41,921 nt of DNA, taken from assembly GCA_001179505.1 (NCBI GenBank), contig CDMY01000618.1, positions 1 to 41,921 of the forward strand, given 5' to 3'. The position numbers and the translations under genes are program-made. Shown here in pieces: positions 28,117 through 38,100 of the stretch. The DNA comes from Vitrella brassicaformis CCMP3155 (Eukaryota; Protista; Chromerida). Below the pieces are notes generated by a model. It searched no databases, had not been told where the DNA came from, and saw only the letters and a list, made by a program, of their open reading frames with translations. Each line of letters opens with the position of its first letter. Positions within the stretch are counted from its first letter, which is position 1.

Positions 28117-30417
28117 TCACACACTTGATGACCCGCTCTCAGCACCGTGATGCCCCTCCTTGACAGCAGCCGTACCCCCACCACTCGCATCCCGCTCGTC
28201 TGCACCGCTGTGCTGCTTCCTGAGCCTGGCCTCGAGTGCTGTGTCGATGCGCTCATCACTCGACGCCCACAGCCACCACACAACACCAATCAGATAATGA
28301 GCTATGCACTGCACACACAGATGCACACAGACAGGGGAACGACGAAGGCATGTGCTGTGGAGGTCTGTATGTGGGCGCTGCGCATCCCTGCTCTCATCAC
28401 TCACTCCCTCACCATAAAGAAGACCCATCGCCACCTATCGCCCACAGCCATTCCCGCCTCCTCGCCCTTCCTCAATAACCACCCCACAGTCGGCACCGAA
28501 ACGATCCCCCCGAGGTTGCAGAATGTGTTGCTTGTCCCGTACAGCAGCCCAGCCATCGTCGGCGCCATGTCCAAGTGCATCACATTTAGCGCTCCGTACC
28601 CCAGTGCATCGCTCCCAGTCGCCAGGGTGAGGAACAGTGTTGCGACGAGGGGCGAGGCGGCCTCGTAAGCAAGGCCCAGGATGGCCAGGGCGGCCGTCAG
28701 CATCGACACTGCCTGGATGAACCGGCGCACATGAATCACGCGCCATCTGGATGGAGAACAGCAAAGGAAGCAAAACAGAGATATTGATTGCCCAATTATT
28801 TTGTTGGCAGCGAGAAGGCACTGTCAACTAGCTCAGCTGCACACCAATTTACCCTTTTCGGATCATCATGTCGGCGAGCAGACCAGCGAAGGCACTGGCA
28901 ACCGCCATGGCCACATAGGGCAGTGACGAGAAGAACCCCAGCTCTGCATCAGAGACGGAGAACCGGTCGTTGATAAACGAAGGAGCCCACGTCATCAGCG
29001 CGATCTGTGTGCGGAGGAAAAGAAAAGAAAGGATCAGAACAAAGGTTTCAGACCGTTTCGTGTGGGCGTGCCGTTGGGTGCTCACCCTAGGTCCGCAGAC
29101 AGCGTAATGGCACCCGAGAAGAGCCCACACACTCCGATAAGACAGCAACGCAAACCACATCCGCAGTGTGTAACGCCACGTGTGCTTGGCAGCCTTTTGT
29201 GCAGGTGGACGCTCTCGTTTCCCCTCCATCGCCGCCTTGAGCCTCGCTTGCACAGGCAGGGTGCGCGGAGGGCGCTTCGGGGAGTCCTTCCTCTCTCGCA
29301 CGGGGAGTTTGGGGGCATCCAACGAAAGAAGGCCAGTCCGCTCGCCTTTGCGCGGACTGTCGTCAGCGGCAGCAGGGCTGTCTTGGGAGTCCATGTGGGG
29401 CCTGGTGGGGAGGGGTGGAGAGATGGCGTCCTCCGACGGGACGGAGGGGACGGGCTGTGGACTCATCAGCTCGTCGTCACTCTTGAGGCGATTCACCTCA
29501 GTGGGGCTGTTGTCCTCTTGCACCTTGCTGCTGGATGATTCGGCACACGTCCGAGTGCTCTCGCTCAGACCCCTCACACGCACCGACAGGCCGTCGCGGA
29601 TTTCACTCTTAGCGGCATCGCTAGTGGACTCCTTGCCGCCTAAAGAAAGCCCCGTCCAGAAGGGAAGCCACAGTAGCGTTGCGGCCGAGAAGAGGAAGAA
29701 GGGCAGGCTCCACTCAGGGAACCAGGTTTGCAACCAGCTGCTGCCTGTGTCTGCTGCTGCTGGTGGGACAACTTCCCCCTTCTTGCCGCCGACGAGAGGC
29801 GTGATGAAGAAGGCGGACACGAGCCCCACGTACAAGGCCGAGTGCGGGAGGGCAGAGGCAACCGACATGCTGGAGGGGGGGATGTGCCGGCTGACGAGTG
29901 AGTGGATGCTGGGATACATGGCGCCTTGCACAAGACCCATCGCGACTCGAACAACAATCAGGCCCCAGAGCCCAGAGTGGAGCGTCTGCATTGCATTCAG
30001 CGAATCAATGAATCAATGAACACAATTGCAAGCACACACGCTCCTTCGCTTGTGTGTTACCGTCGAAGGTGTGGCGGCACCGAGCAGGGCACTGCCGACC
30101 ACACTCACGGTCAGCACTTCCTTCGCAGAATAGTCAGCCACAGAGCCGCCGATGATCTGCGTCGACACGTAGCCCCAGAAGAAGGCTTGTAGCACAAAGC
30201 CCTGCTGCTGCTTGTCCCATCCCATCGAGCCGCTCATCGGAATGATGGCCGACGAAAGGATCATCCTCTGACACCACCACAAACAGCACAGCACCACAGC
30301 ACTTGACGCATGGATCTCCCTCCAATCACACACAACCTTTGTTGTGCGTACCTGCAGGAAGTTGAGGAACACGCCTATGCACACAAGGCAGAGCATCTTC
30401 ACCCATGATGACGACAT
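28117..30417 (-). CDS. MFS anion:cation symporter (SLC17/PHT4/sialin-like)
   Basis: NFLQRMILSSAIIPMS..GWDKQQQGFVLQAFFWGYVSTQIIGGSVAD, RVAMGLVQGAMYPSIHSL, TWAPSFI, HLDMAPTMAGLLYGTSNTF; long central loop. Confidence 0.9.
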
Positions 30418-30689
30418 TGGCGCTGGAAAGATAAGTTAACGATCAGATCTCCTCCAGTTGCTTCCCTCTCATCTGGGACCGAGCTCGGCCTCAATGGTGT
30501 AGGGTTTGGGTTTCAGGGTTTTGCCGAAAAGGGCGAATGCCCGGCCAAGGCCACCGCAGTGTTGTCAAGGGCGTCTAGGCTACCTGTCAGGCTTGACCAC
30601 CGGACTTTTGTAGGCTCTCAAACACCAGAGATCCGCTCCCCCTCTTGGATCGTCGTGCTCTGGGGCCGGAGAACAACGACAGGCGTAGA

Positions 30690-33158
30690 ATGGCCACGAC
30701 AGCTGCTTTCTTGTTGGTGGTGGTCTTGGCCGCTGGGGCCTACGCAAAAGATGCCACATCGAACCAGGGGGCTTCATTGAGAGGCCTCAAAGTGCCAGAA
30801 GGTGAGGAGCGTCTGGCAAGCCATCCATATGTCGCCCATCGGCGCCACCCCATCTGTTTTCTCTTTCTCCTTCCCATCCGTCAGGTTGCTACACCCCGGG
30901 CAAGGACTACGCGGGGTCCGATGTGGTGAACTGGAAGGACATCAGCTCCGCCGAGCACTGCCAGTCCAAGTGCCAGGCACACGCCAAGTGCGCCGTCTTC
31001 AACTACCGCGACAACGAGAAGGAGTGCTGGCTCAAGTCCGAGAAGGCCCTCGAGGGCAAACCGAAAGACGACCCGAGGGCCCTCACTGGGCCAAAGACAT
31101 GCTTCCCCGGTATGCATGCCGGAATCTTATGAGAGGGGGAATGAATGCCCCCTTGGGTTTTTCTTCTCTGTGTCGGTGTGTGTCTCGTTCGTTCATGGTG
31201 TGGCTGGCTGCCAGAGTGTTATGAGGAGGGCGTTCAGTTCGAGAGCAAGCTCGTGCTCAGGGTGCGTAACGTGCTGACAGCCGAGGCGTGCCAGCACCTG
31301 TGTCAGGGGAACAAGGAGTGCAACGCCTTCACCTTCGTCCCGCTGCAGATGCGATGCAAGCTGCACCGGTCGAAACAGAAGAAGACAAAGCAGACTGGGG
31401 ATGCGCTGACTATCTCTGGACCGAAACAGTGCAAAGGAGGTACGGATATATAAGGCAACGCAACCGGGGCAGACTAGACTGTGCCGTAGATAGAAGAGGG
31501 AGGGAGGGAGACATGGCATGAGTGTTGCTCTGCTACGGTTCATGTGTCACTGTCACTGGTGCATGAATGGAATGCCTGTTGTGTGGTCAGCTCCGCCCAT
31601 GCCTGACGCCCCGGACGCCCCGGACACTCCTGGTGCTCCGAACCCGGGCGGCCAGGAGAAGTTCCAGCTTACCACTAAGGACTCTTTCATCAAATTCGGC
31701 AAGTCGCAAGAAGGTATGTGTGCCTAGTTGTCCACTTGTGCCCACGAATGATACGAACTCATATATCTTCTCTGTGTCCCTCTCTCCACATATGTGCGTA
31801 TCCAGGCACTCTTCGTGCGTTGGCAGACAGCCGTAAGCTCTACATCGGCTCGGCCATCAACACGGCCAACATGAACGACCAAAAATACCTCCGCACCCTC
31901 GCTGAGCAGTACAACATGGCCGTCGCCGAGTGGGAATGCAAAATGTCAGAAATGGCGCCAAGCAACGGCAACAACATCAACTGGGGCCTCTGCGATAAGT
32001 CAGTACGATGGATGGCTAAGGAAGAAAGGAACGACCCATCCATCTGCATGTCTCTGTGTGTCGGCGTGTCTCAATAGGATAGCTGATTTCTGCGAAGCCA
32101 GTCGTATGGGGTTCCGCTACCACGCCCTGGCCTGGTACTATTCCATCCCGGGCTGGTTCAAGGGACTCAGCCCTAACGACAAGAAAACTGCCCTCAAGAC
32201 CTTCACCGACAAGGTGGTCGACCACTACGTTGACAAGGCCCTCTGGTGGGATGTCGCCAACGAAGGTGAGACAGGGACGGAGGGAGAGGGCGTCCAGGCA
32301 GACACAGTGCAGAGGCATGTTGCTGATGTTGGTGTGTGCACTCAGCTCTGAACGACAACCAGCCTGACGGTGGCAAGACCCCCAAGTACCGCGAAGACGG
32401 TGCCCTGTACCCCGCCATCCCCGACTGGGTGTCGTATTCCTTCCACCTCGCCCACAAGGCCCTGTCGGCCAAGGGCAAGCCATTCAAGCTCTACTACAAC
32501 GACTACGGCGTCGCCTCGATGGTACGCACTCACGACACACCGAGAGACACATGCGAGCACCATTCCCTCCATGTCTCTGGTCTGGTGGTTTGCCCAGGAT
32601 GGTTGGTCGAGCGGCAAGTCCAACGCCATGTTCAACATGGTCAAGGGTCTGGCCAAGGACAACTCCATCGACGGCGTGGGATTCCAGCTGCACATCAACA
32701 CCTACTACGACCTGGTCCCCGGTGTGCGCAAGAACATCCAGCGATACGGCGAGCTCGGCCTGGAAGTCCAGTTCACCGAGCTGGACGTGGGCTGCGGTGA
32801 GTGGCAGGCCCCCACTGGCGAAATGGTGGGCGGCGACAAATGGGTCCCATGCCCCGACTGGGACAACGGACAGGCTGCACGCCAGGTAGGTGGGGAGGGA
32901 GAGCGTGGAGCAGGCAGGCCACGGACGCATTTCTCACCTTACAGGTAGATGTATCCCTTGTCATTGCAGGCTGAGGTGTATTCAAGGCTGATGGCAGTGT
33001 GCCTGGAAGAGCCCAACTGCACCGCCTTCGTCATGTGGGGCGTCTCCGACAAGAACACGTGGCTCAAGAACTCCCGCCCACTCCTCTACGACGAGAACTA
33101 CGCGCAGAAGCCCGCCTGGTGGGCTGTGCACGACATGATGAAGAGCTACGGCAAGTAA
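30690..33158 (+). CDS. Secreted protein: signal peptide + 2 PAN/Apple domains + Pro/Asp linker + GH10 endo-beta-xylanase domain
   Basis: MATTAAFLLVVVLAAGAYA; CYTPGKDYAGSD..HCQSKCQAHAKCAVFNY..CWLK..LTGPKTC; CYEEG..ACQHLCQGNKECNAFTF..ISGPKQC. GH10 motifs VAEWECKM, RYHALAW, WDVANE (E at 32262-64), YYNDY, DGVGFQLH, FTELDV (E at 32778-80), WGVSDKNTW, PLLYDENYAQKPAW. Confidence 0.93.
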
Positions 33159-33725
33159 ACCCAGTCTCACCACACCAACTGCCTGCCTGTCTGCCTGAGG
33201 GGCCGGCGGGTGGGCCGTCTTTGATTATTGTGATTTTGGGGAAGGGGGCGGCCTGGGTTTGGTTTAATTGCATGGATTGGTTTGCTGGATCGATCTGCCC
33301 TAGAAGTAGGAACATATAGCGCCCGATTTTCCCCAGCTGGACCGCGCTATATCCTGACGACTGTGTGTGTGTGTGTGTGTGTGACTGCGCTAGTTGGCGG
33401 TTTTTGTAAGAGACACCCACACAACAATGCACTTTTTGTGAAAGGCACACAGCAACACACGGCAGACATACGACTGACATGTTTCTTGATGATTGATATA
33501 ATCATCCGCTCGGGTTCCGTTTGCTGACTGACGTGCGTGTTTCCTCGGGGGTGTGGTTAGATGTTAGTTCATGTGACACACGGACTGGAAAGGAACGCGA
33601 ACATTGCGATGAAGCGCATTCACACGTACGTCGACGTCATCAGTCCTCACACACCAGACGTACGCACGCAGACATTCTGTATCTCTCCGCCGGTCACAGA
33701 TGCGTGTATTCCTTTGTCCGTTTGT

Positions 33726-34697
33726 TCATTCTTCGTCGAGCTCTGGTGGGAATTCGAAGTGCTTGTTGATTTCCTCCAGCGGCGCGCCCTGCTCACGGGA
33801 CATCCATCGACGGGCCGTGATGATGTTGTCGGTCCTACACACACACACACACACACACAGAGGACACAGAGAGATAGGGAGCTCGTGCCTGTCGCTAGAC
33901 GAATGAGTGCATGTCTTACCATCTCTCGACGGCTTGTTTGGCCATGTCGATTTCCTGTCGCTTCTGCTGGATGGCACGGGGGTCGTTGGAACGGAACGCA
34001 GCCAGCGACTTGTCCAACTCCTGTCACACAGCACAACACCATGTCTCTCCTTGTCTTTCTCTTGTGCGTGTGAGTGTGACCTCCGTCTCCTGTTGCAGTG
34101 TGAGCATTTTGTCGAGGTTGGCCTTGTATGTCGCGTCACCGGCACTCTTGCGGGCCTCGTCCAGCTTGACCGACATCGACTCGAGCTCATCACGCAGACG
34201 AGCCTCCTCCTCACTGACACACAACAACTCGATGACACACACTGATGGCACAGAGACAGGAAGGCCGCCTCACCGCAACGAGGTGAGCAGCCTTTCCTGA
34301 GCCTTCTTCTGCTCAGATGGCAACGCCCTGCGCGGCCAGTCCACACACAGACACACAAAGAACGGCACATCCATGCACGTGTTTCGCCTGATGGATGGAG
34401 TTGGCTGACCACTAGATGTTGGATGCGCCGACTTTGTCTGTGAGTATGATGCCGTCTTTCACGAGCTCATTCACCACGTCCTTGACCGACTGAAGCACAA
34501 TCCCGACACCAGTAGCTGCACACAGACAGAGTGAGACACAATCAACCATGGGCAGCGGCGTGTGATCACTTACCGAGCTTCTCTAGTTGCTTCATGGTGA
34601 AGAATGACTTGCTCTTGTGCATGGCGTCGGTGAGTCTGCGCTTCTTCTCGTCGAACGAGAGGCCCTTGCCGCCCTTGCCTCCACCCTTGGGCGGCAT
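33726..34697 (-). pseudogene. MND1: MND1 meiotic recombination factor interrupted by in-frame TAG (pseudogene, null allele or sequence error)
   Basis: MPPKGG..KGLSFDEKKRRL..FFTMKQLEKLA..GIVLQSVKDVVNELVKDG..DKVGASNI*WALPSE..NDP..VERWTDNI..FEFPPELDEE*. TAG at 34414-34412; the rest splices in frame. Confidence 0.85.
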
Positions 34698-35193
34698 GCT
34701 GGTGTGACCGACAGCCGGATGGCCAGACGAATGAATCGGTCGAGCAAAGAGAGAAGAGACAAACAGTGAGTCAGTCAGTCAGTCGACCCAAGACGTCGTG
34801 GTGTACACGTATGCATGTGTCTAAATATTGGACGTCGATCGCTTGATGTCAGTGTGAGTGCCCCCATGTGATGGTCAGTGATCAGTCAGTCAGACGTCTG
34901 TGTCTCTTGGTCTGCCGTGTCTCTCTCTCTTCCTCTTTCTTCGTTCTGTCTGCGCTCTCATAAGCAAACTTCCTGGTGCAACTAGTACTTACTGTGGGCA
35001 TTCACTTGTGTAATATTGTGGGGTGGAAAGGAAAGCAAATGCACTGAAAGGAAAACAACGAGGAAAGATGAGTAAACAAGAGTGCATGTACTCGTCTCCT
35101 TCCCCCACAAGCCATCCATGCCAGTGATGCCCCACAGCCCCACAAAGGACACTGATGAGTGTCTTTTACTTGAAGGCAAAATGAAGATATCGA

Positions 35194-38100
35194 TCATAGC
35201 TGGGCTTGATGTCCATCCACACTGACACGCACATCATCCGCTGTCACAGCTGACCGCGTTAGAAAAGGCCAAAACGCGCTCTTGCCATGCCCTCTCGTGG
35301 AGCCATCCCTACTCCGATCGGCCCCCTCCACCATTTTGCAGCCGCCTTCTCTGCCTCTCTCCCGTGCCCCCTTTTTCTGCAGCATATAAGTGAAATCGGT
35401 GTCTCCCCCAGACGGGGGAGTGTCGATCCATCGTTCCAGATCGTCGCACCAAAGACATGGGTCGCCCATCACCAGGGTGAGGAACTGCTCCAGGGCTTTG
35501 ACACGTCCCGAGCTCTCCGACCCTTTGTGATGATTGGCAATGCCCGTCAGACCAAGCTGAAGCCGGGAAGGTAAAGTGGGCAGCAGCAGGAAAGGGAACT
35601 TGGCCTCTAGGGTCGCTCTTAGAGTCTCGAAATCAGCCCATGTCTTGAACAGTCGCCTGGTCTGTGTGTCGACCTTCATCTCGATGGCATATCGACAACC
35701 ACGGTAGGGGAGGTGCTGTCGAGGGCTGCGTGGAGTGTCTTCTGCTGCGTTTGTTGAAGGATAGACATGTCTCGGAGAGTGCGAGGGCGTAGGCAGTGAG
35801 GAGTCGCTTGTGTCCGTCGCTCGTCTGGAGCGTCTCGATGACACGTCTCCAGCGATCTCCGTGACAACAATGTTGCTGACGAAGTGGTTACGGCGCCTGA
35901 ACGTGTGCAAATCAGATATACGGAAGAGACAAGACGGCAACACGAAGCGTTGTGCCATACCAGGTGCCCTGATAGTAGTATGCCTTGACGAGGTAATCGA
36001 TGTGCGCCGGATTCGGCGCGTTGACGAACGCCAGCAGAGCAGCGGGAGACGTCTCCCCGACAGCATTCAGAAATCCCTGCATGTCGTCTCTCCTTCTCTC
36101 CATTTGCTTGTCAAACCGCACGTATCTCCCACTCCCGCACGGCGGCCGCGCAAACAGCCGCCGAAATTGCCCCATCTCACTTTTTCCTTCTACGCTGGGC
36201 CCGCCATCTCTTACGCTTCGCCACAGCTCAGCAAAATCTGTCCATCTCTTGCCAACACATTTGAGACTGAGCCTGTCCGGTCCGACAAGTCTTACAACGA
36301 AGACCTCGAAGAGCCGTCGTGTCATCGCTTCTTTGAGCAGGAGGGGCTGACTGTCCAATTCGACATTCACTTTGGCGAACAGCATACAGGCGTGGTTGTT
36401 GACCTTGTCGAACTTTGTTTGACCTTGTCTACCACACCGATCTCCTGTGCACTCGCTCTCATTGTCCTCTCCTCCTCTCGTTGGTGAGACTGGCTTCTTC
36501 CCAAGTGAGGCTTTGTGCTCGTCATCCTTAACGGGCGCATGGCGGGGCTGGCTGTCAGTGAGAAGGAAGGAGCTTCCAATGTCCGCCAAATCCAGCTCTG
36601 TAACGGCCACGGCAAAACAAGGATGAGACGAGATATTCATGTTCCCATCGGCTTACCTCCGATCGACGATGGACATGGCCTGATCAACACCGAGCTGGTC
36701 GAAAGGAAGGATGGCATCGTGAGGGGCAGCGCGGCTTCCCCATTCATGTCGTCATCATCGTCGGCACTCGACAACTCCCCTTGCTCATCATCCTCCGAAA
36801 AGACCCCAGGGCTCTCCTTGACCCGACCTGCAGCTCGTGTGTGGTGTGTGAATGCCGGATGGCTGGCGAGGGCGGGGGACGAGAGATGTTTGGGCAGTGG
36901 GGGCGAAGGAGATGAATGGCAAGGGGGGCTTGGCGGTCCCGCTTGGTCGTGTCTCCGATCATTCCCCACGCACACCTCCCTCACGACCAGCGGTGATGGA
37001 TCTCCGTTGTCCCCTTCAAGCTCCTCCGGGACCGTGGTGAAGGCACTCACTCGGCCAAAGTGGCTGCAAGTTCTCTCACCCTCATCCATAGCTCTCTCGA
37101 CATCACGGCTTTCTAGAGGCAGCTGCGTCATCATGGTGGCTTTCCCTGTCGACCTCTTTAGCTCCGTCACCCATCGATCGCGCCCAGCGACAGATCCAGC
37201 CCTGAAGTAGAGAGGCGCCCTCAGATGCGTCTGGCCGATGCTTGGAGGGAGACCATGGCCGCTGAGCAGCTCTTGTGTCGGTTCATCCTTCTGGCTGGAT
37301 TGGCCCCTTGAGATGGGAAGCGGGTCAGGGGGTGGCGGTGCGGGGACAATCTCAAAACCTTCAGGACAGACGGCGGCGAGGGCTGACGCCTCTGGCGATG
37401 CATCGCGGTCCTGAAGTCACAGATGCGGGGATGACTGCATTTTGGTTTAGTGTGTCTCTCCACAAATGTTTCGTTGTACGGTGAAGAGATGGATCGATGC
37501 CCCGATGAGCGGGATCTCCGTGAGAGGCGCGCCCTCGACAGGCGACTGGTACGTCAGAGTGTCTTTCGATATGCAACAAAATGTCTGCTGCCAGGCTTTC
37601 GCAATCCCGCACCTGACCGCCAGACACCGCACAGAAACACCACATCTCTCGTATTACGGGACATCCACTTAGCTGTCGTCACCGGTTCACCTTTTGTCCA
37701 GCCATCCCTGAAACCCCTGCGCCCATGACCTGTCTCTGGCGTCTCGACCTCTTTTGCCGATCAGACCGAAAGCCCTCCTCTGATGCGCCAATGGGGTGAG
37801 CGGGCCTCGCAAATGTCCCTCATCTCTCCCTGCTTCATTTGGTGCCGGAAATGAAATACATGGGCGTCGAGGAGTCGTCTCAGATGTCCCGGAGCTGACC
37901 TCAGATGGTGCATCACCAGGACGGCTCTCCGATGCTCGGAGTTTAGAAGCCACTTCAGATAGACAGATACATAGGCATACAATGCAATGCTGGAGGCATA
38001 GATGTCTCTTGCCTACAAATGTCAGAAGACAGGGAAGTCAGCGCCTTGCTCGCTCCTTTGTGCGTGTGGAAGCGTGGCCGCAGACTCTCTGAGTCAGCTC

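What the first reader, a model, noticed from the sequence alone, without database searches (positions are those of the whole stretch)
30690..33158. Secreted Apple-Apple-GH10 xylanase: microneme-type adhesion modules fused to a glycosidase
Seen: signal peptide, two Apple domains, a PDAPDAPDTPGAPNP linker and a GH10 domain with both catalytic Glu motifs (WDVANE, FTELDV), split by 8-9 introns. Known: GH10 xylanases usually carry CBMs on such linkers, and some apicomplexan Apple domains (e.g. TgMIC4) are galactose lectins. Inference: the Apples act as carbohydrate-binding modules for digesting algal xylan or remodelling the cell's own wall. That would link free-living wall digestion to the adhesin modules of parasites. 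The many introns mean any bacterial origin is old.
Basis: partly seen in the sequence, partly recalled or inferred. Interest (0 to 1): 0.8.

Follow-up and report, generated by a model that had tools for sequence, protein, structure and literature searches.

The report
Secreted Apple-Apple-GH10 enzyme of Vitrella
A coral-reef alga related to malaria parasites makes a secreted xylanase-type enzyme carrying two 'Apple' modules like those its parasitic relatives use to grip host sugars. The gene is real, expressed and one of at least five such genes in this alga (a probable sixth is only partly seen), but what it cuts and what the Apples bind is untested.

Summary
Window 30690-33158 (+) is a nine-exon gene with eight GT-AG introns. 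It encodes a 572-aa protein: signal peptide, two six-cysteine Apple/PAN domains, a disordered Pro/Asp/Ala linker, and a complete GH10 barrel with both catalytic glutamates (E355, E475).

- **Expression.** Spliced contigs from three studies confirm all eight junctions. One 1764-nt contig runs from the 5' leader through the Apple exons into the last exon, so the fusion is a single transcript.
- **Already public.** The protein (Vitrella brassicaformis CCMP3155, auto-named endo-1,4-beta-xylanase) is in public databases with these Pfam domains. No paper in the held library describes PAN+GH10.
- **Not unique in this alga.** At least five mapped Vitrella genes combine PAN and GH10, and a sixth is seen only in part. 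Outside Vitrella I found one orphan GH16-PAN-GH10 on an AT-rich contig, and PAN-like modules on protist GH10s.
- **New details.** Apple domains are bounded by phase-1 introns in all five mapped genes. The GH10 sits in a protist clade, not the bacterial one. The closest trio replaces the conserved -2 subsite Asn with Trp.
- **Apple fold.** Its best structural match is the galactose-binding microneme lectin SML-2.

A CBM-like role for the Apples is plausible but untested. The earlier scan noted related PAN-enzyme fusions elsewhere in this genome.

The parts
30537..30578 (+). 13-codon upstream ORF in the 5' leader (minor feature)
   Evidence: Read. X7 contig 13 starts about 73 nt before 30600, so the leader is transcribed. 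Function not tested.
30690..30801 (+). Exon 1: start codon, signal peptide (aa 1-19, likely cleaved after AYA) and a short spacer; ends in phase 1
   Evidence: The signal peptide is judged by inspection. In the model it is a helix at 4-14 with low pLDDT.
30885..31109 (+). Exon 2 (225 nt, phase 1-1): Apple/PAN domain 1, aa 38-112, six Cys
   Evidence: PAN_1 E 2e-13. PDB sequence hits to kallikrein, TgMIC4 and SML-2. Model pLDDT 94.8. Best fold match SML-2 2yil, TM 0.79.
31215..31439 (+). Exon 3 (225 nt, phase 1-1): Apple/PAN domain 2, aa 113-187, six Cys at the same spacing
   Evidence: PAN_1 E 7e-10. PDB sequence hits to FXI, EtMIC5 and SML-2. pLDDT about 80 in the full model.
31591..31713 (+). 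Exon 4 (123 nt, phase 1-1): Pro/Asp/Ala-rich linker, aa 188-228
   Evidence: No Pfam family. pLDDT under 50 for residues 188-210 and 216-219. Poorly conserved against paralogue P0152.
31806..33158 (+). Exons 5-9 with introns 5-8: GH10 catalytic domain, aa 229-572, and stop codon
   Evidence: PF00331 E 3e-71 over aa 231-565. pLDDT about 97. TM 0.90-0.95 to solved GH10 xylanases.
31931..31933 (+). Trp271 codon, at the position of the conserved -2 subsite Asn (E-N-E-x-K becomes E-W-E-C-K)
   Evidence: Alignment to 1xyz. About 65 of 79 aligned GH10 domains have E-N here. Only P0151, P0152 and P0001 have E-W.
32262..32264 (+). Glu355 codon: catalytic acid/base in WDVANE, the last full codon of exon 6
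32778..32780 (+). Glu475 codon: catalytic nucleophile in FTELDV
32522..32597 (+). Intron 7. Its first 63 nt recur, 98% identical, as an extra intron at a different site in paralogue P0152.

Best explanation
This is an expressed nuclear gene of the chromerid alga Vitrella brassicaformis. It encodes a secreted, modular glycoside hydrolase.

**Shown.**
- A signal peptide sends the protein into the secretory pathway.
- Two tandem six-cysteine Apple domains are joined by a roughly 40-residue disordered Pro/Asp/Ala linker to a GH10 (beta/alpha)8 barrel.
- The barrel keeps the complete retaining machinery: acid/base E355, nucleophile E475 and all -1 subsite residues.

**Inferred.**
- The GH10 domain is an active endo-beta-glycanase of the xylanase type.
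- The Apples act as non-catalytic targeting modules, CBM-like lectins, that hold the enzyme on an insoluble glycan or glycoprotein surface.
- The most likely site of action is the alga's own cellulose/hemicellulose wall, during growth, wall turnover or release of daughter cells from the sporangium.
- The Asn-to-Trp change in the -2 subsite, specific to this three-gene clade, suggests a substrate preference that differs from textbook beta-1,4-xylanases.
- The fusion arose within the Vitrella lineage by joining phase-1-bounded Apple exons to a protist-type GH10, and then spread by gene and segmental duplication.
For: **Gene and transcript.** The exon model is confirmed junction by junction, and the Apple and GH10 exons lie in one contig.

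**Domains and fold.**

**Catalytic and -1 subsite motifs.** They are conserved across a 79-sequence alignment.

**CBM-like placement.** The linker is disordered and divergent.

**Selection.** Both Apples keep all six Cys and show dN/dS below 1 against the 68%-identical paralogue: 0.62 and 0.32, compared with 0.15-0.40 in the GH10 exons.

**Recurrence of PAN on GH10.**
- PAN recurs on GH10 in five mapped Vitrella genes, and a sixth is partly seen.
- Outside Vitrella there is a GH16-PAN-GH10 orphan.
- PAN-like modules sit on Pro-rich linkers of GH10s from Stephanoeca and from marine metagenomes (hhalign probability 89.5%, E 2e-6).

**Lectin precedents.**
- TgMIC4 Apple 5 binds beta-galactosides (PMC13672358, citing Marchant 2012).

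**Own-wall target.**
- The wall of the sister chromerid Chromera velia contains 4-linked and 2,4-linked xylose, 8% galactose and about 60% 4-linked glucose (PMC9293442).
- The transcript is found in the assemblies of three separate studies.
- Paralogue P0023 sits in a 4960-nt gene, the same length as the expansin-like/four-PAN/GH10 gene of earlier scan note s1-248668. I confirmed only the PAN and GH10 parts.
Against: - No binding or activity data exist for any PAN+GH10 protein.
- Apple domains also mediate protein-protein contacts, as in FXI/kallikrein and in MIC4 A1-A2 with MIC1.
- I could not check the galactose-site residues, because the SML-2 and MIC4 structure papers are not in the held library.
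- Trp271 replaces a substrate-binding Asn, so xylan is not assured.
- Wall composition is known for Chromera, not for Vitrella.
- Apple 1 has a fairly high dN/dS (0.62), and the exons are short.
- The culture conditions of the runs are coded and unknown, so expression without an external substrate is assumed, not shown.
Confidence: 0.55

Rival explanations
1. Nutritional enzyme. The protein is secreted into the surroundings to digest foreign polysaccharides, such as walls of other algae or detritus in the coral skeleton, for osmotrophic carbon gain. The Apples target that foreign substrate.
For: The GH10 family is expanded in Vitrella. Relatives occur in heterotrophic or mixotrophic marine protists, namely Stephanoeca, Norrisiella and Triparma.
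Against: Vitrella is a walled phototroph. The transcript is present in three studies' assemblies. A chromerid wall itself contains 4-linked xylose (PMC9293442). The neighbouring MFS gene shows only a generic MFS_1 match, which does not identify its substrate.
Confidence: 0.2
2. The Apples are protein-binding anchors or oligomerisation modules. They would tether the enzyme to a wall or surface protein, or make dimers, as in FXI or MIC4-MIC1. They would not be lectins.
For: Sequence and fold similarity to kallikrein/FXI Apples and to MIC4 Apples 1-2 is as strong as to the lectin SML-2. MIC4 A1-A2 binds MIC1 (PMC13672358).
Against: The best fold match is a galactose lectin. PAN recurs on several unrelated carbohydrate-active enzymes in this genome and on a fungal AA5 oxidase. 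That pattern fits glycan targeting better than a specific protein partner.
Confidence: 0.2
3. Not a canonical xylanase. The clade-specific Asn-to-Trp (W271) and Gly-to-Tyr/Phe (before the conserved His) changes, and an insertion after the nucleophile strand that several solved GH10s lack, retune the cleft for another beta-glycan or for transglycosylation. This could hold together with the best explanation.
For: Only P0151, P0152 and P0001 of 79 aligned GH10s carry E-W-E-C-K and Y/F-H. There is an insertion of about 17 residues relative to 1xyz after FTELDV, which the model shows as a hairpin.
Against: All -1 subsite and catalytic residues are canonical. From memory of the Cellvibrio Xyn10A mutagenesis literature, -2 subsite mutants keep activity on polymeric xylan.
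Confidence: 0.25
4. Annotation artefact: two adjacent genes, an Apple protein and a GH10, wrongly read as one.
For: None beyond the general risk with multi-exon models.
Against: One 1764-nt spliced contig carries the leader, both Apple exons, the linker and the GH10 exons. All junctions keep the frame. Two paralogues have the same layout.
Confidence: 0.02

Closest known systems
Modular GH10 endo-beta-1,4-xylanases with CBMs (e.g. Clostridium thermocellum XynZ catalytic domain 1XYZ; Cellulomonas fimi Cex/Xyn10A with CBM2)
   Same: The GH10 barrel matches with TM 0.91-0.94 at about 30% identity. Both catalytic Glu and the -1 subsite are kept. The layout is the same: a binding module, a flexible Pro-rich linker and a catalytic domain.
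   Different: The accessory modules are Apple/PAN domains, not a recognised CBM family. The -2 subsite Asn is Trp. The gene is eukaryotic with eight introns. The enzyme belongs to a protist clade.
Apicomplexan microneme Apple lectins: Sarcocystis muris SML-2 (2YIL), Toxoplasma MIC4, Eimeria MIC5
   Same: Six-Cys Apple fold. SML-2 and MIC4 are the best structural matches to Apple 1 (TM 0.79, 25-28% identity), and there are full-length sequence alignments. Tandem Apple arrangement, secreted protein, related lineage (Myzozoa).
   Different: Those proteins have no enzyme domain and act as host-cell adhesins released from micronemes. Sugar binding by the Vitrella Apples is untested.
Phytophthora CBEL (CBM1-PAN/Apple wall glycoprotein)
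   Same: PAN/Apple modules in a secreted protein that acts on a cellulosic wall. Gal/GalNAc lectin activity was measured for CBEL, and its authors hypothesise the PAN/Apple domain mediates it (PMC3532174).
   Different: CBEL is non-catalytic and pairs PAN with CBM1. That paper states that no enzymatic activity is associated with CBM1-PAN proteins.
Colletotrichum graminicola AA5_2 copper radical oxidase with N-terminal PAN domain (6RYV/6STX)
   Same: A PAN domain appended to a secreted carbohydrate-active enzyme. It is a structural hit to Apple 1, TM 0.76-0.81.
   Different: Oxidase rather than hydrolase, fungal, a single PAN, 14-18% identity.
Vitrella paralogues P0152, P0001 (2 PAN + GH10) and P0023, P0010 (4 PAN + GH10)
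   Same: Same architecture class. P0152 is 68% identical and has a copy of the same downstream neighbour, MND1. Intron positions are shared.
   Different: Linker length, number of PAN domains, extra modules, and Asn kept at the -2 site in P0023.

Membership tests
Glycoside hydrolase family 10 | Full-length match to the family profile (PF00331) | tested here: met
   aa 231-565 against profile positions 2-310 of 311, E 3e-71. The exons match collinearly.
Glycoside hydrolase family 10 | (beta/alpha)8 barrel superimposable on solved GH10 enzymes | tested here: met
   pLDDT about 97. TM 0.90-0.95 and rmsd 1.4-2.0 to 1xyz, 3wub, 2exo and others.
Glycoside hydrolase family 10 | Acid/base Glu in the N-E motif and nucleophile Glu in T-E-x-D | tested here: met
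   E355 in WDVANE and E475 in FTELDV align with the catalytic residues of solved xylanases.
Glycoside hydrolase family 10 | Conserved -1 subsite residues: His and Trp of xHxLxW, Gln and His of GxQxH, and the two Trp of WG..D..W | tested here: met
   YHALAW, GFQLH and MWGVSDKNTW.
Glycoside hydrolase family 10 | Glu-Asn pair of the -2 subsite (E-N-E-x-K) | tested here: not met
   The motif is E-W-E-C-K, with Trp271 in place of Asn. This is unique to the three-gene clade among 79 domains. It is a substrate-contact residue, not a defining catalytic one.
Glycoside hydrolase family 10 | Measured endo-beta-xylanase activity | not testable with these tools
   Needs recombinant protein.
PAN/Apple domain | Match to PF00024 and six Cys in the Apple pattern (C1..C6, with C2-C5 in the core) | tested here: met
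   E 2e-13 and 7e-10. Cys at positions 1, 25, 29, 35, 47 and 72 of both 74-aa exon translations. Disulfide pairing is inferred.
PAN/Apple domain | Apple fold | tested here: met
   Apple 1 model has pLDDT 94.8. It matches SML-2, MIC4, kallikrein and FXI with TM 0.74-0.79. Apple 2 appears only within the full model, at pLDDT about 80.
Carbohydrate-binding module (functional sense) | Discrete non-catalytic fold within a carbohydrate-active enzyme | tested here: met
Carbohydrate-binding module (functional sense) | Demonstrated carbohydrate binding | not testable with these tools
   There are lectin precedents only (PMC3532174, PMC13672358). Ligand-site residues could not be compared.
Microneme adhesin (MIC4/SML-2 type) | Apple-only adhesin delivered from micronemes to bind host glycans | tested here: not met
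   The protein carries an enzyme domain, and the organism is a free-living alga. Only the module type is shared.

The most novel reading that the evidence does not exclude
In the free-living ancestors of apicomplexans, Apple domains were glycan-binding modules of secreted wall-active enzymes (GH10, GH16, AA12-type). They moved between genes as phase-1-bounded exon cassettes, and parasites later kept only the binding modules as host-glycan adhesins. In addition, this three-gene clade evolved a new GH10 specificity through the Asn-to-Trp change in the -2 subsite.
Probability: 0.25. Interest if true: 0.7.

Novelty: new variant of a known kind. Interest (0 to 1): 0.45.

Why it matters
If the Apples prove to be glycan-binding modules, PAN/Apple would become a eukaryotic CBM-type family. 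It would also give a concrete pre-parasitic function for the module that Toxoplasma, Sarcocystis and Eimeria use to bind host sugars. The phase-1 exon boundaries offer a testable route, exon shuffling, for how one module came to sit on several enzyme classes in a chromerid. The altered -2 subsite flags a possibly new GH10 specificity in marine protists. Against this, the gene is already in public annotation, the family is ordinary in chemistry, and nothing functional is shown yet.

Tried and rejected
- **Joined model not typed.** The stored protein P0151, returned and shown to hold every exon translation in order, was used for whole-protein steps.
- **Apple-pair word search.** It found only the protein itself and P0152, which says little about distant relatives.
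- **ESM Atlas look-ups.** They returned only generic GH10 and PAN clusters, with no PAN+GH10 cluster.
- **Relatives of the orphan GH16-PAN-GH10 protein P0005.** No locus in viral contigs, and only one weak partial hit (11% of the query) among proteins.
- **Exon mapping of P0264 failed.** Its introns were left out of the comparison.
- **Literature.** Vitrella+xylanase, PAN domain+GH10, Vitrella+apple domain and chromerid+glycoside hydrolase+PAN gave nothing relevant.
- **Galactose-site residues.** The SML-2 and MIC4 papers were not in the library, so conservation of the ligand site was not tested.
- **Functional pairing with the upstream gene.** Considered and rejected. The gene shows only a weak generic MFS_1 match, and that flank has no counterpart at the paralogous locus.
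- **Plastid targeting.** Considered and rejected. Only about 19 residues lie between the signal peptide and Apple 1.
- **Limit of the architecture survey.** It covers only the 150 best representatives for exon 8 and the 120 best word-search hits, so PAN+GH10 in more distant GH10 lineages is not excluded.
Full report
**What is there.**
Reading 30400-33500 and translating the three forward frames gives a clean nine-exon model on the + strand. The exons are 30690-30801, 30885-31109, 31215-31439, 31591-31713, 31806-31998, 32078-32265, 32346-32521, 32598-32885 and 32970-33158. There are eight GT-AG introns of 76-151 nt.

- Exons 2 and 3 are PAN_1 domains (E 2e-13 and 7e-10).
- Exon 4 has no family.
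- Exons 5-9 match the GH10 profile PF00331 in order, at profile positions 2-60, 65-128, 148-175, 178-242 and 253-310 of 311.
- Each Apple exon translation has six cysteines at the same positions, 1, 25, 29, 35, 47 and 72.
- WDVANE, FTELDV and the PDAPDAPDTPGAPNP linker are present as described.
- The signal peptide (hydrophobic core, then A-Y-A before K-D) is judged by eye, because no predictor was on hand.

**Is it one expressed gene?**
Yes. Eight public runs hold the stretch. I laid four of them on 30600-33300.
- Runs X1, X7 and X8, from three studies, carry contigs that skip all eight introns at exactly the predicted GT..AG boundaries.
- X3 covers the introns unspliced, as genomic DNA would.
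- X7 record 13, 1764 nt long, runs from about 73 nt upstream of 30600 through exons 1-8 and across the last junction.

So the Apple and GH10 exons sit in a single transcript. Contigs cannot exclude rare isoforms.

**Identity and public status.**
A search of all representatives with exon 8 led to P0001. A word search with P0001 then returned P0151. P0151 is 572 aa, lies on a contig of 41921 nt, and is named 'unnamed protein product [Vitrella brassicaformis CCMP3155]' by NCBI and 'endo-1,4-beta-xylanase' by UniRef. It carries precomputed Pfam families PF00331, PF00024 and PF14295. Every exon translation lies in P0151 in order, joined by the junction residues that the split codons predict.

The gene model and its domain content are therefore already public. 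I used P0151 as the reference for whole-protein steps and never typed or sent a joined sequence. Four literature searches found no paper on PAN+GH10 or on Vitrella xylanases.

**Anatomy of the protein.**
Pfam on P0151 places the first PAN_1 domain at 41-110, reports a second (Apple 2, the exon-3 product, aa 113-187), and places GH10 at 231-565. An AlphaFold model built on a 74-row alignment gives the following.
- Two Apple domains at pLDDT about 80-90.
- Disordered segments at 188-210 and 216-219 (pLDDT under 50).
- A barrel at pLDDT about 97.

The barrel superimposes on solved GH10 xylanases with TM 0.90-0.95 and rmsd 1.4-2.0. Apple 1 modelled alone reaches pLDDT 94.8. Its best structural matches are, in order:
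- the galactose-binding microneme lectin SML-2 of Sarcocystis muris (TM 0.79, rmsd 1.9, 28% identity);
- Toxoplasma MIC4 Apples 1-2;
- kallikrein and FXI Apples;
- the PAN domain of a fungal AA5 copper oxidase.

Sequence searches of the PDB agree. 'Microneme-type Apple' is thus a fair description of the module, though it is about equally close to the vertebrate Apples.

**Active site.**
Alignment to solved enzymes and a 79-domain alignment show what is kept and what has changed.
- Kept: the acid/base Glu (E355), the nucleophile Glu (E475), the His and Trp of xHxLxW, the Gln and His of GxQxH, and both Trp of WG..D..W.
- Changed: the E-N-E-x-K motif of the -2 subsite reads E-W-E-C-K. Trp271 replaces an Asn present in about 65 of the 79 domains.
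- Changed: the Gly before the conserved His is Tyr or Phe.

Both changes are confined to the three closest paralogues, P0151, P0152 and P0001. An insertion of about 17 residues follows the nucleophile strand relative to 1xyz; paralogue P0002 has a similar segment at the same place, so it is not confined to the trio. The catalytic chemistry looks intact, and the substrate preference may not be textbook.

**Family context.**
Vitrella has many GH10 genes.
- With PAN: P0151, P0152 (68% identical), P0001, P0023 (four PAN), P0010 (four PAN), and a 1236-aa gene lying head-to-head with P0010 that I saw only in part.
- Without PAN: P0002, P0159, P0012 and P0264.

In a quick maximum-likelihood tree of 79 GH10 domains, the trio is a starred clade (SH-aLRT 98). 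It sits inside a loosely supported, mostly Vitrella group (SH-aLRT 94). That group lies in a clade of protist and marine-metagenome sequences (Norrisiella, Triparma, Stephanoeca), apart from the bacterial and anaerobic-fungal clades. The root is not inferred and many rows are unnamed, so this argues against a recent bacterial transfer rather than proving vertical descent.

**Exon structure.**
I mapped five proteins onto their loci.
- In every gene, the Apple domains are bounded by phase-1 introns.
- They are single 225-255-nt phase 1-1 exons for both Apples of P0151, for Apple 1 of P0152 and P0001, and for most of those in P0010. One P0010 PAN exon is 309 nt. In P0152 and P0001 the Apple 2 exon starts in phase 1 but, in the annotated models, runs on into the linker (300 and 345 nt).
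- In P0023 some are split internally, but the domain boundaries are still phase 1.
- The linker exon is also 1-1, and the GH10 domain always begins at a phase-1 intron.
- Within GH10, the intron directly after the acid/base Glu (phase 1) and the intron at P0151 residue 510 (phase 0) are shared by all five genes.

These introns therefore predate the family's expansion. The symmetric phase-1 layout is what exon shuffling needs. Among paralogues, however, it could simply be inherited, so shuffling remains an inference until unrelated PAN fusions are checked.

**Is the architecture found elsewhere?**
The survey covered 271 fetched proteins.
- Pfam-grade PAN+GH10 outside Vitrella appears once. P0005 is an intronless 768-aa GH16-PAN-GH10 on an 8.45-kb contig of 24-31% GC, next to bacterial-type topoisomerase and AAA genes. 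It has no full-length relatives.
- GH10s from the choanoflagellate Stephanoeca diplocostata and from several marine metagenome proteins carry a Cys-rich module on a Pro-rich linker. Pfam does not call this module, but a profile comparison links it to the PAN core (probability 89.5%, E 2e-6).
- Earlier notes of this scan report PAN fused to GH16 and to an AA12-type dehydrogenase in the same genome; I did not re-test those.

Repeated attachment of PAN-type modules to secreted carbohydrate-active enzymes is the best indirect support for a CBM-like role.

**Function.**
- **Shown:** a secreted modular layout, an intact retaining GH10 machinery, and expression.
- **Inferred:** the Apples target the enzyme to a glycan surface.

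The precedents are the beta-galactoside binding of MIC4 Apple 5 (PMC13672358, citing Marchant 2012) and the Gal/GalNAc lectin activity of CBEL, which its authors hypothesise is mediated by its PAN modules (PMC3532174). Against P0152, both Apple exons keep all cysteines and have dN/dS of 0.62 and 0.32, compared with 0.15-0.40 in the GH10 exons, while the linker diverges freely. That is consistent with functional binding modules, though the exons are short.

For the site of action I favour the alga's own wall.
- The wall of the sister chromerid Chromera velia is about 60% 4-linked glucose, with 2% 4-linked xylose, 0.7% 2,4-linked xylose and 8% galactose (PMC9293442). So both a plausible substrate and a plausible Apple ligand exist there.
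- The transcript is present in three studies' assemblies.

Digestion of foreign algal xylan, protein anchoring by the Apples, and a non-xylan substrate remain open rivals.

**Verdict.**
What is new here is:
- RNA proof of the fusion;
- the phase-1 cassette structure;
- the protist-clade placement with shared old introns;
- the clade-specific Trp in the -2 subsite;
- the structural closeness of Apple 1 to a microneme galactose lectin.

Noticed in passing
window 32522-32597 and L002 3688-3762: The first 63 nt of intron 7 of this gene recur, 98% identical, as an extra 75-nt intron in the last exon of paralogue P0152. The window gene (33009|33010) and P0001 have no intron at that site. P0152's own intron 7 looks clearly different by eye. 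Both insertion sites end in GATG before the GT. This is a candidate recent intron gain by copying a paralogue's intron.
   Followed up: partly
window 33512-34826 and L002 4092-5397: The downstream flank carrying MND1 (minus strand) is 94.6% identical to the flank of paralogue P0152, while the GH10 genes themselves are only 71% identical. This points to a segmental duplication followed by later conversion, or to a second, younger copy event. At window 34412-34414 the minus-strand codon is TAG, where the other copy has TAC (Tyr). The window's MND1 therefore looks like the damaged duplicate. This bears on note s1-233344.
   Followed up: partly
L001 4001-6307: An intronless 768-aa GH16-PAN-GH10 protein (P0005) lies on a 24-31% GC contig (Logan ERR7850081), beside bacterial-type topoisomerase (Toprim/Topoisom_bac) and AAA genes. 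Possibly a giant virus or an AT-rich microbe. It has no full-length relatives in the protein or viral collections.
   Followed up: partly
P0143 30-100, P0181 445-582, P0039 358-426, P0059, P0061, P0129: GH10 enzymes of the choanoflagellate Stephanoeca diplocostata and of marine metagenomes carry a conserved Cys-rich module (consensus TCxNA...CxxxCD...CxAVDTDGxxCYLKS) on Pro-rich linkers. Pfam does not call it, but hhalign links it to the PAN core (probability 89.5%).
   Followed up: partly
window 28404-30435 (minus strand): A multi-exon MFS transporter gene (weak MFS_1 matches on three open stretches) is transcribed divergently from the GH10 gene. Its start lies roughly 250 nt upstream of the GH10 start codon. 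That flank has no match at the paralogous locus.
   Followed up: partly
L004 5605-12960 and L005 1-5887: Other Vitrella GH10 genes are clustered. P0023 (four PAN + GH10) lies head-to-head with the PAN-less GH10 P0264. P0010 (four PAN + GH10) lies head-to-head with another 1236-aa PAN+GH10 gene.
   Followed up: no
window 30537-30578: A 13-codon upstream ORF lies in the transcribed 5' leader of the GH10 gene.
   Followed up: no
window 35197-36066 (minus strand): An open stretch with a PX domain (E 4e-7) lies downstream of MND1.
   Followed up: no
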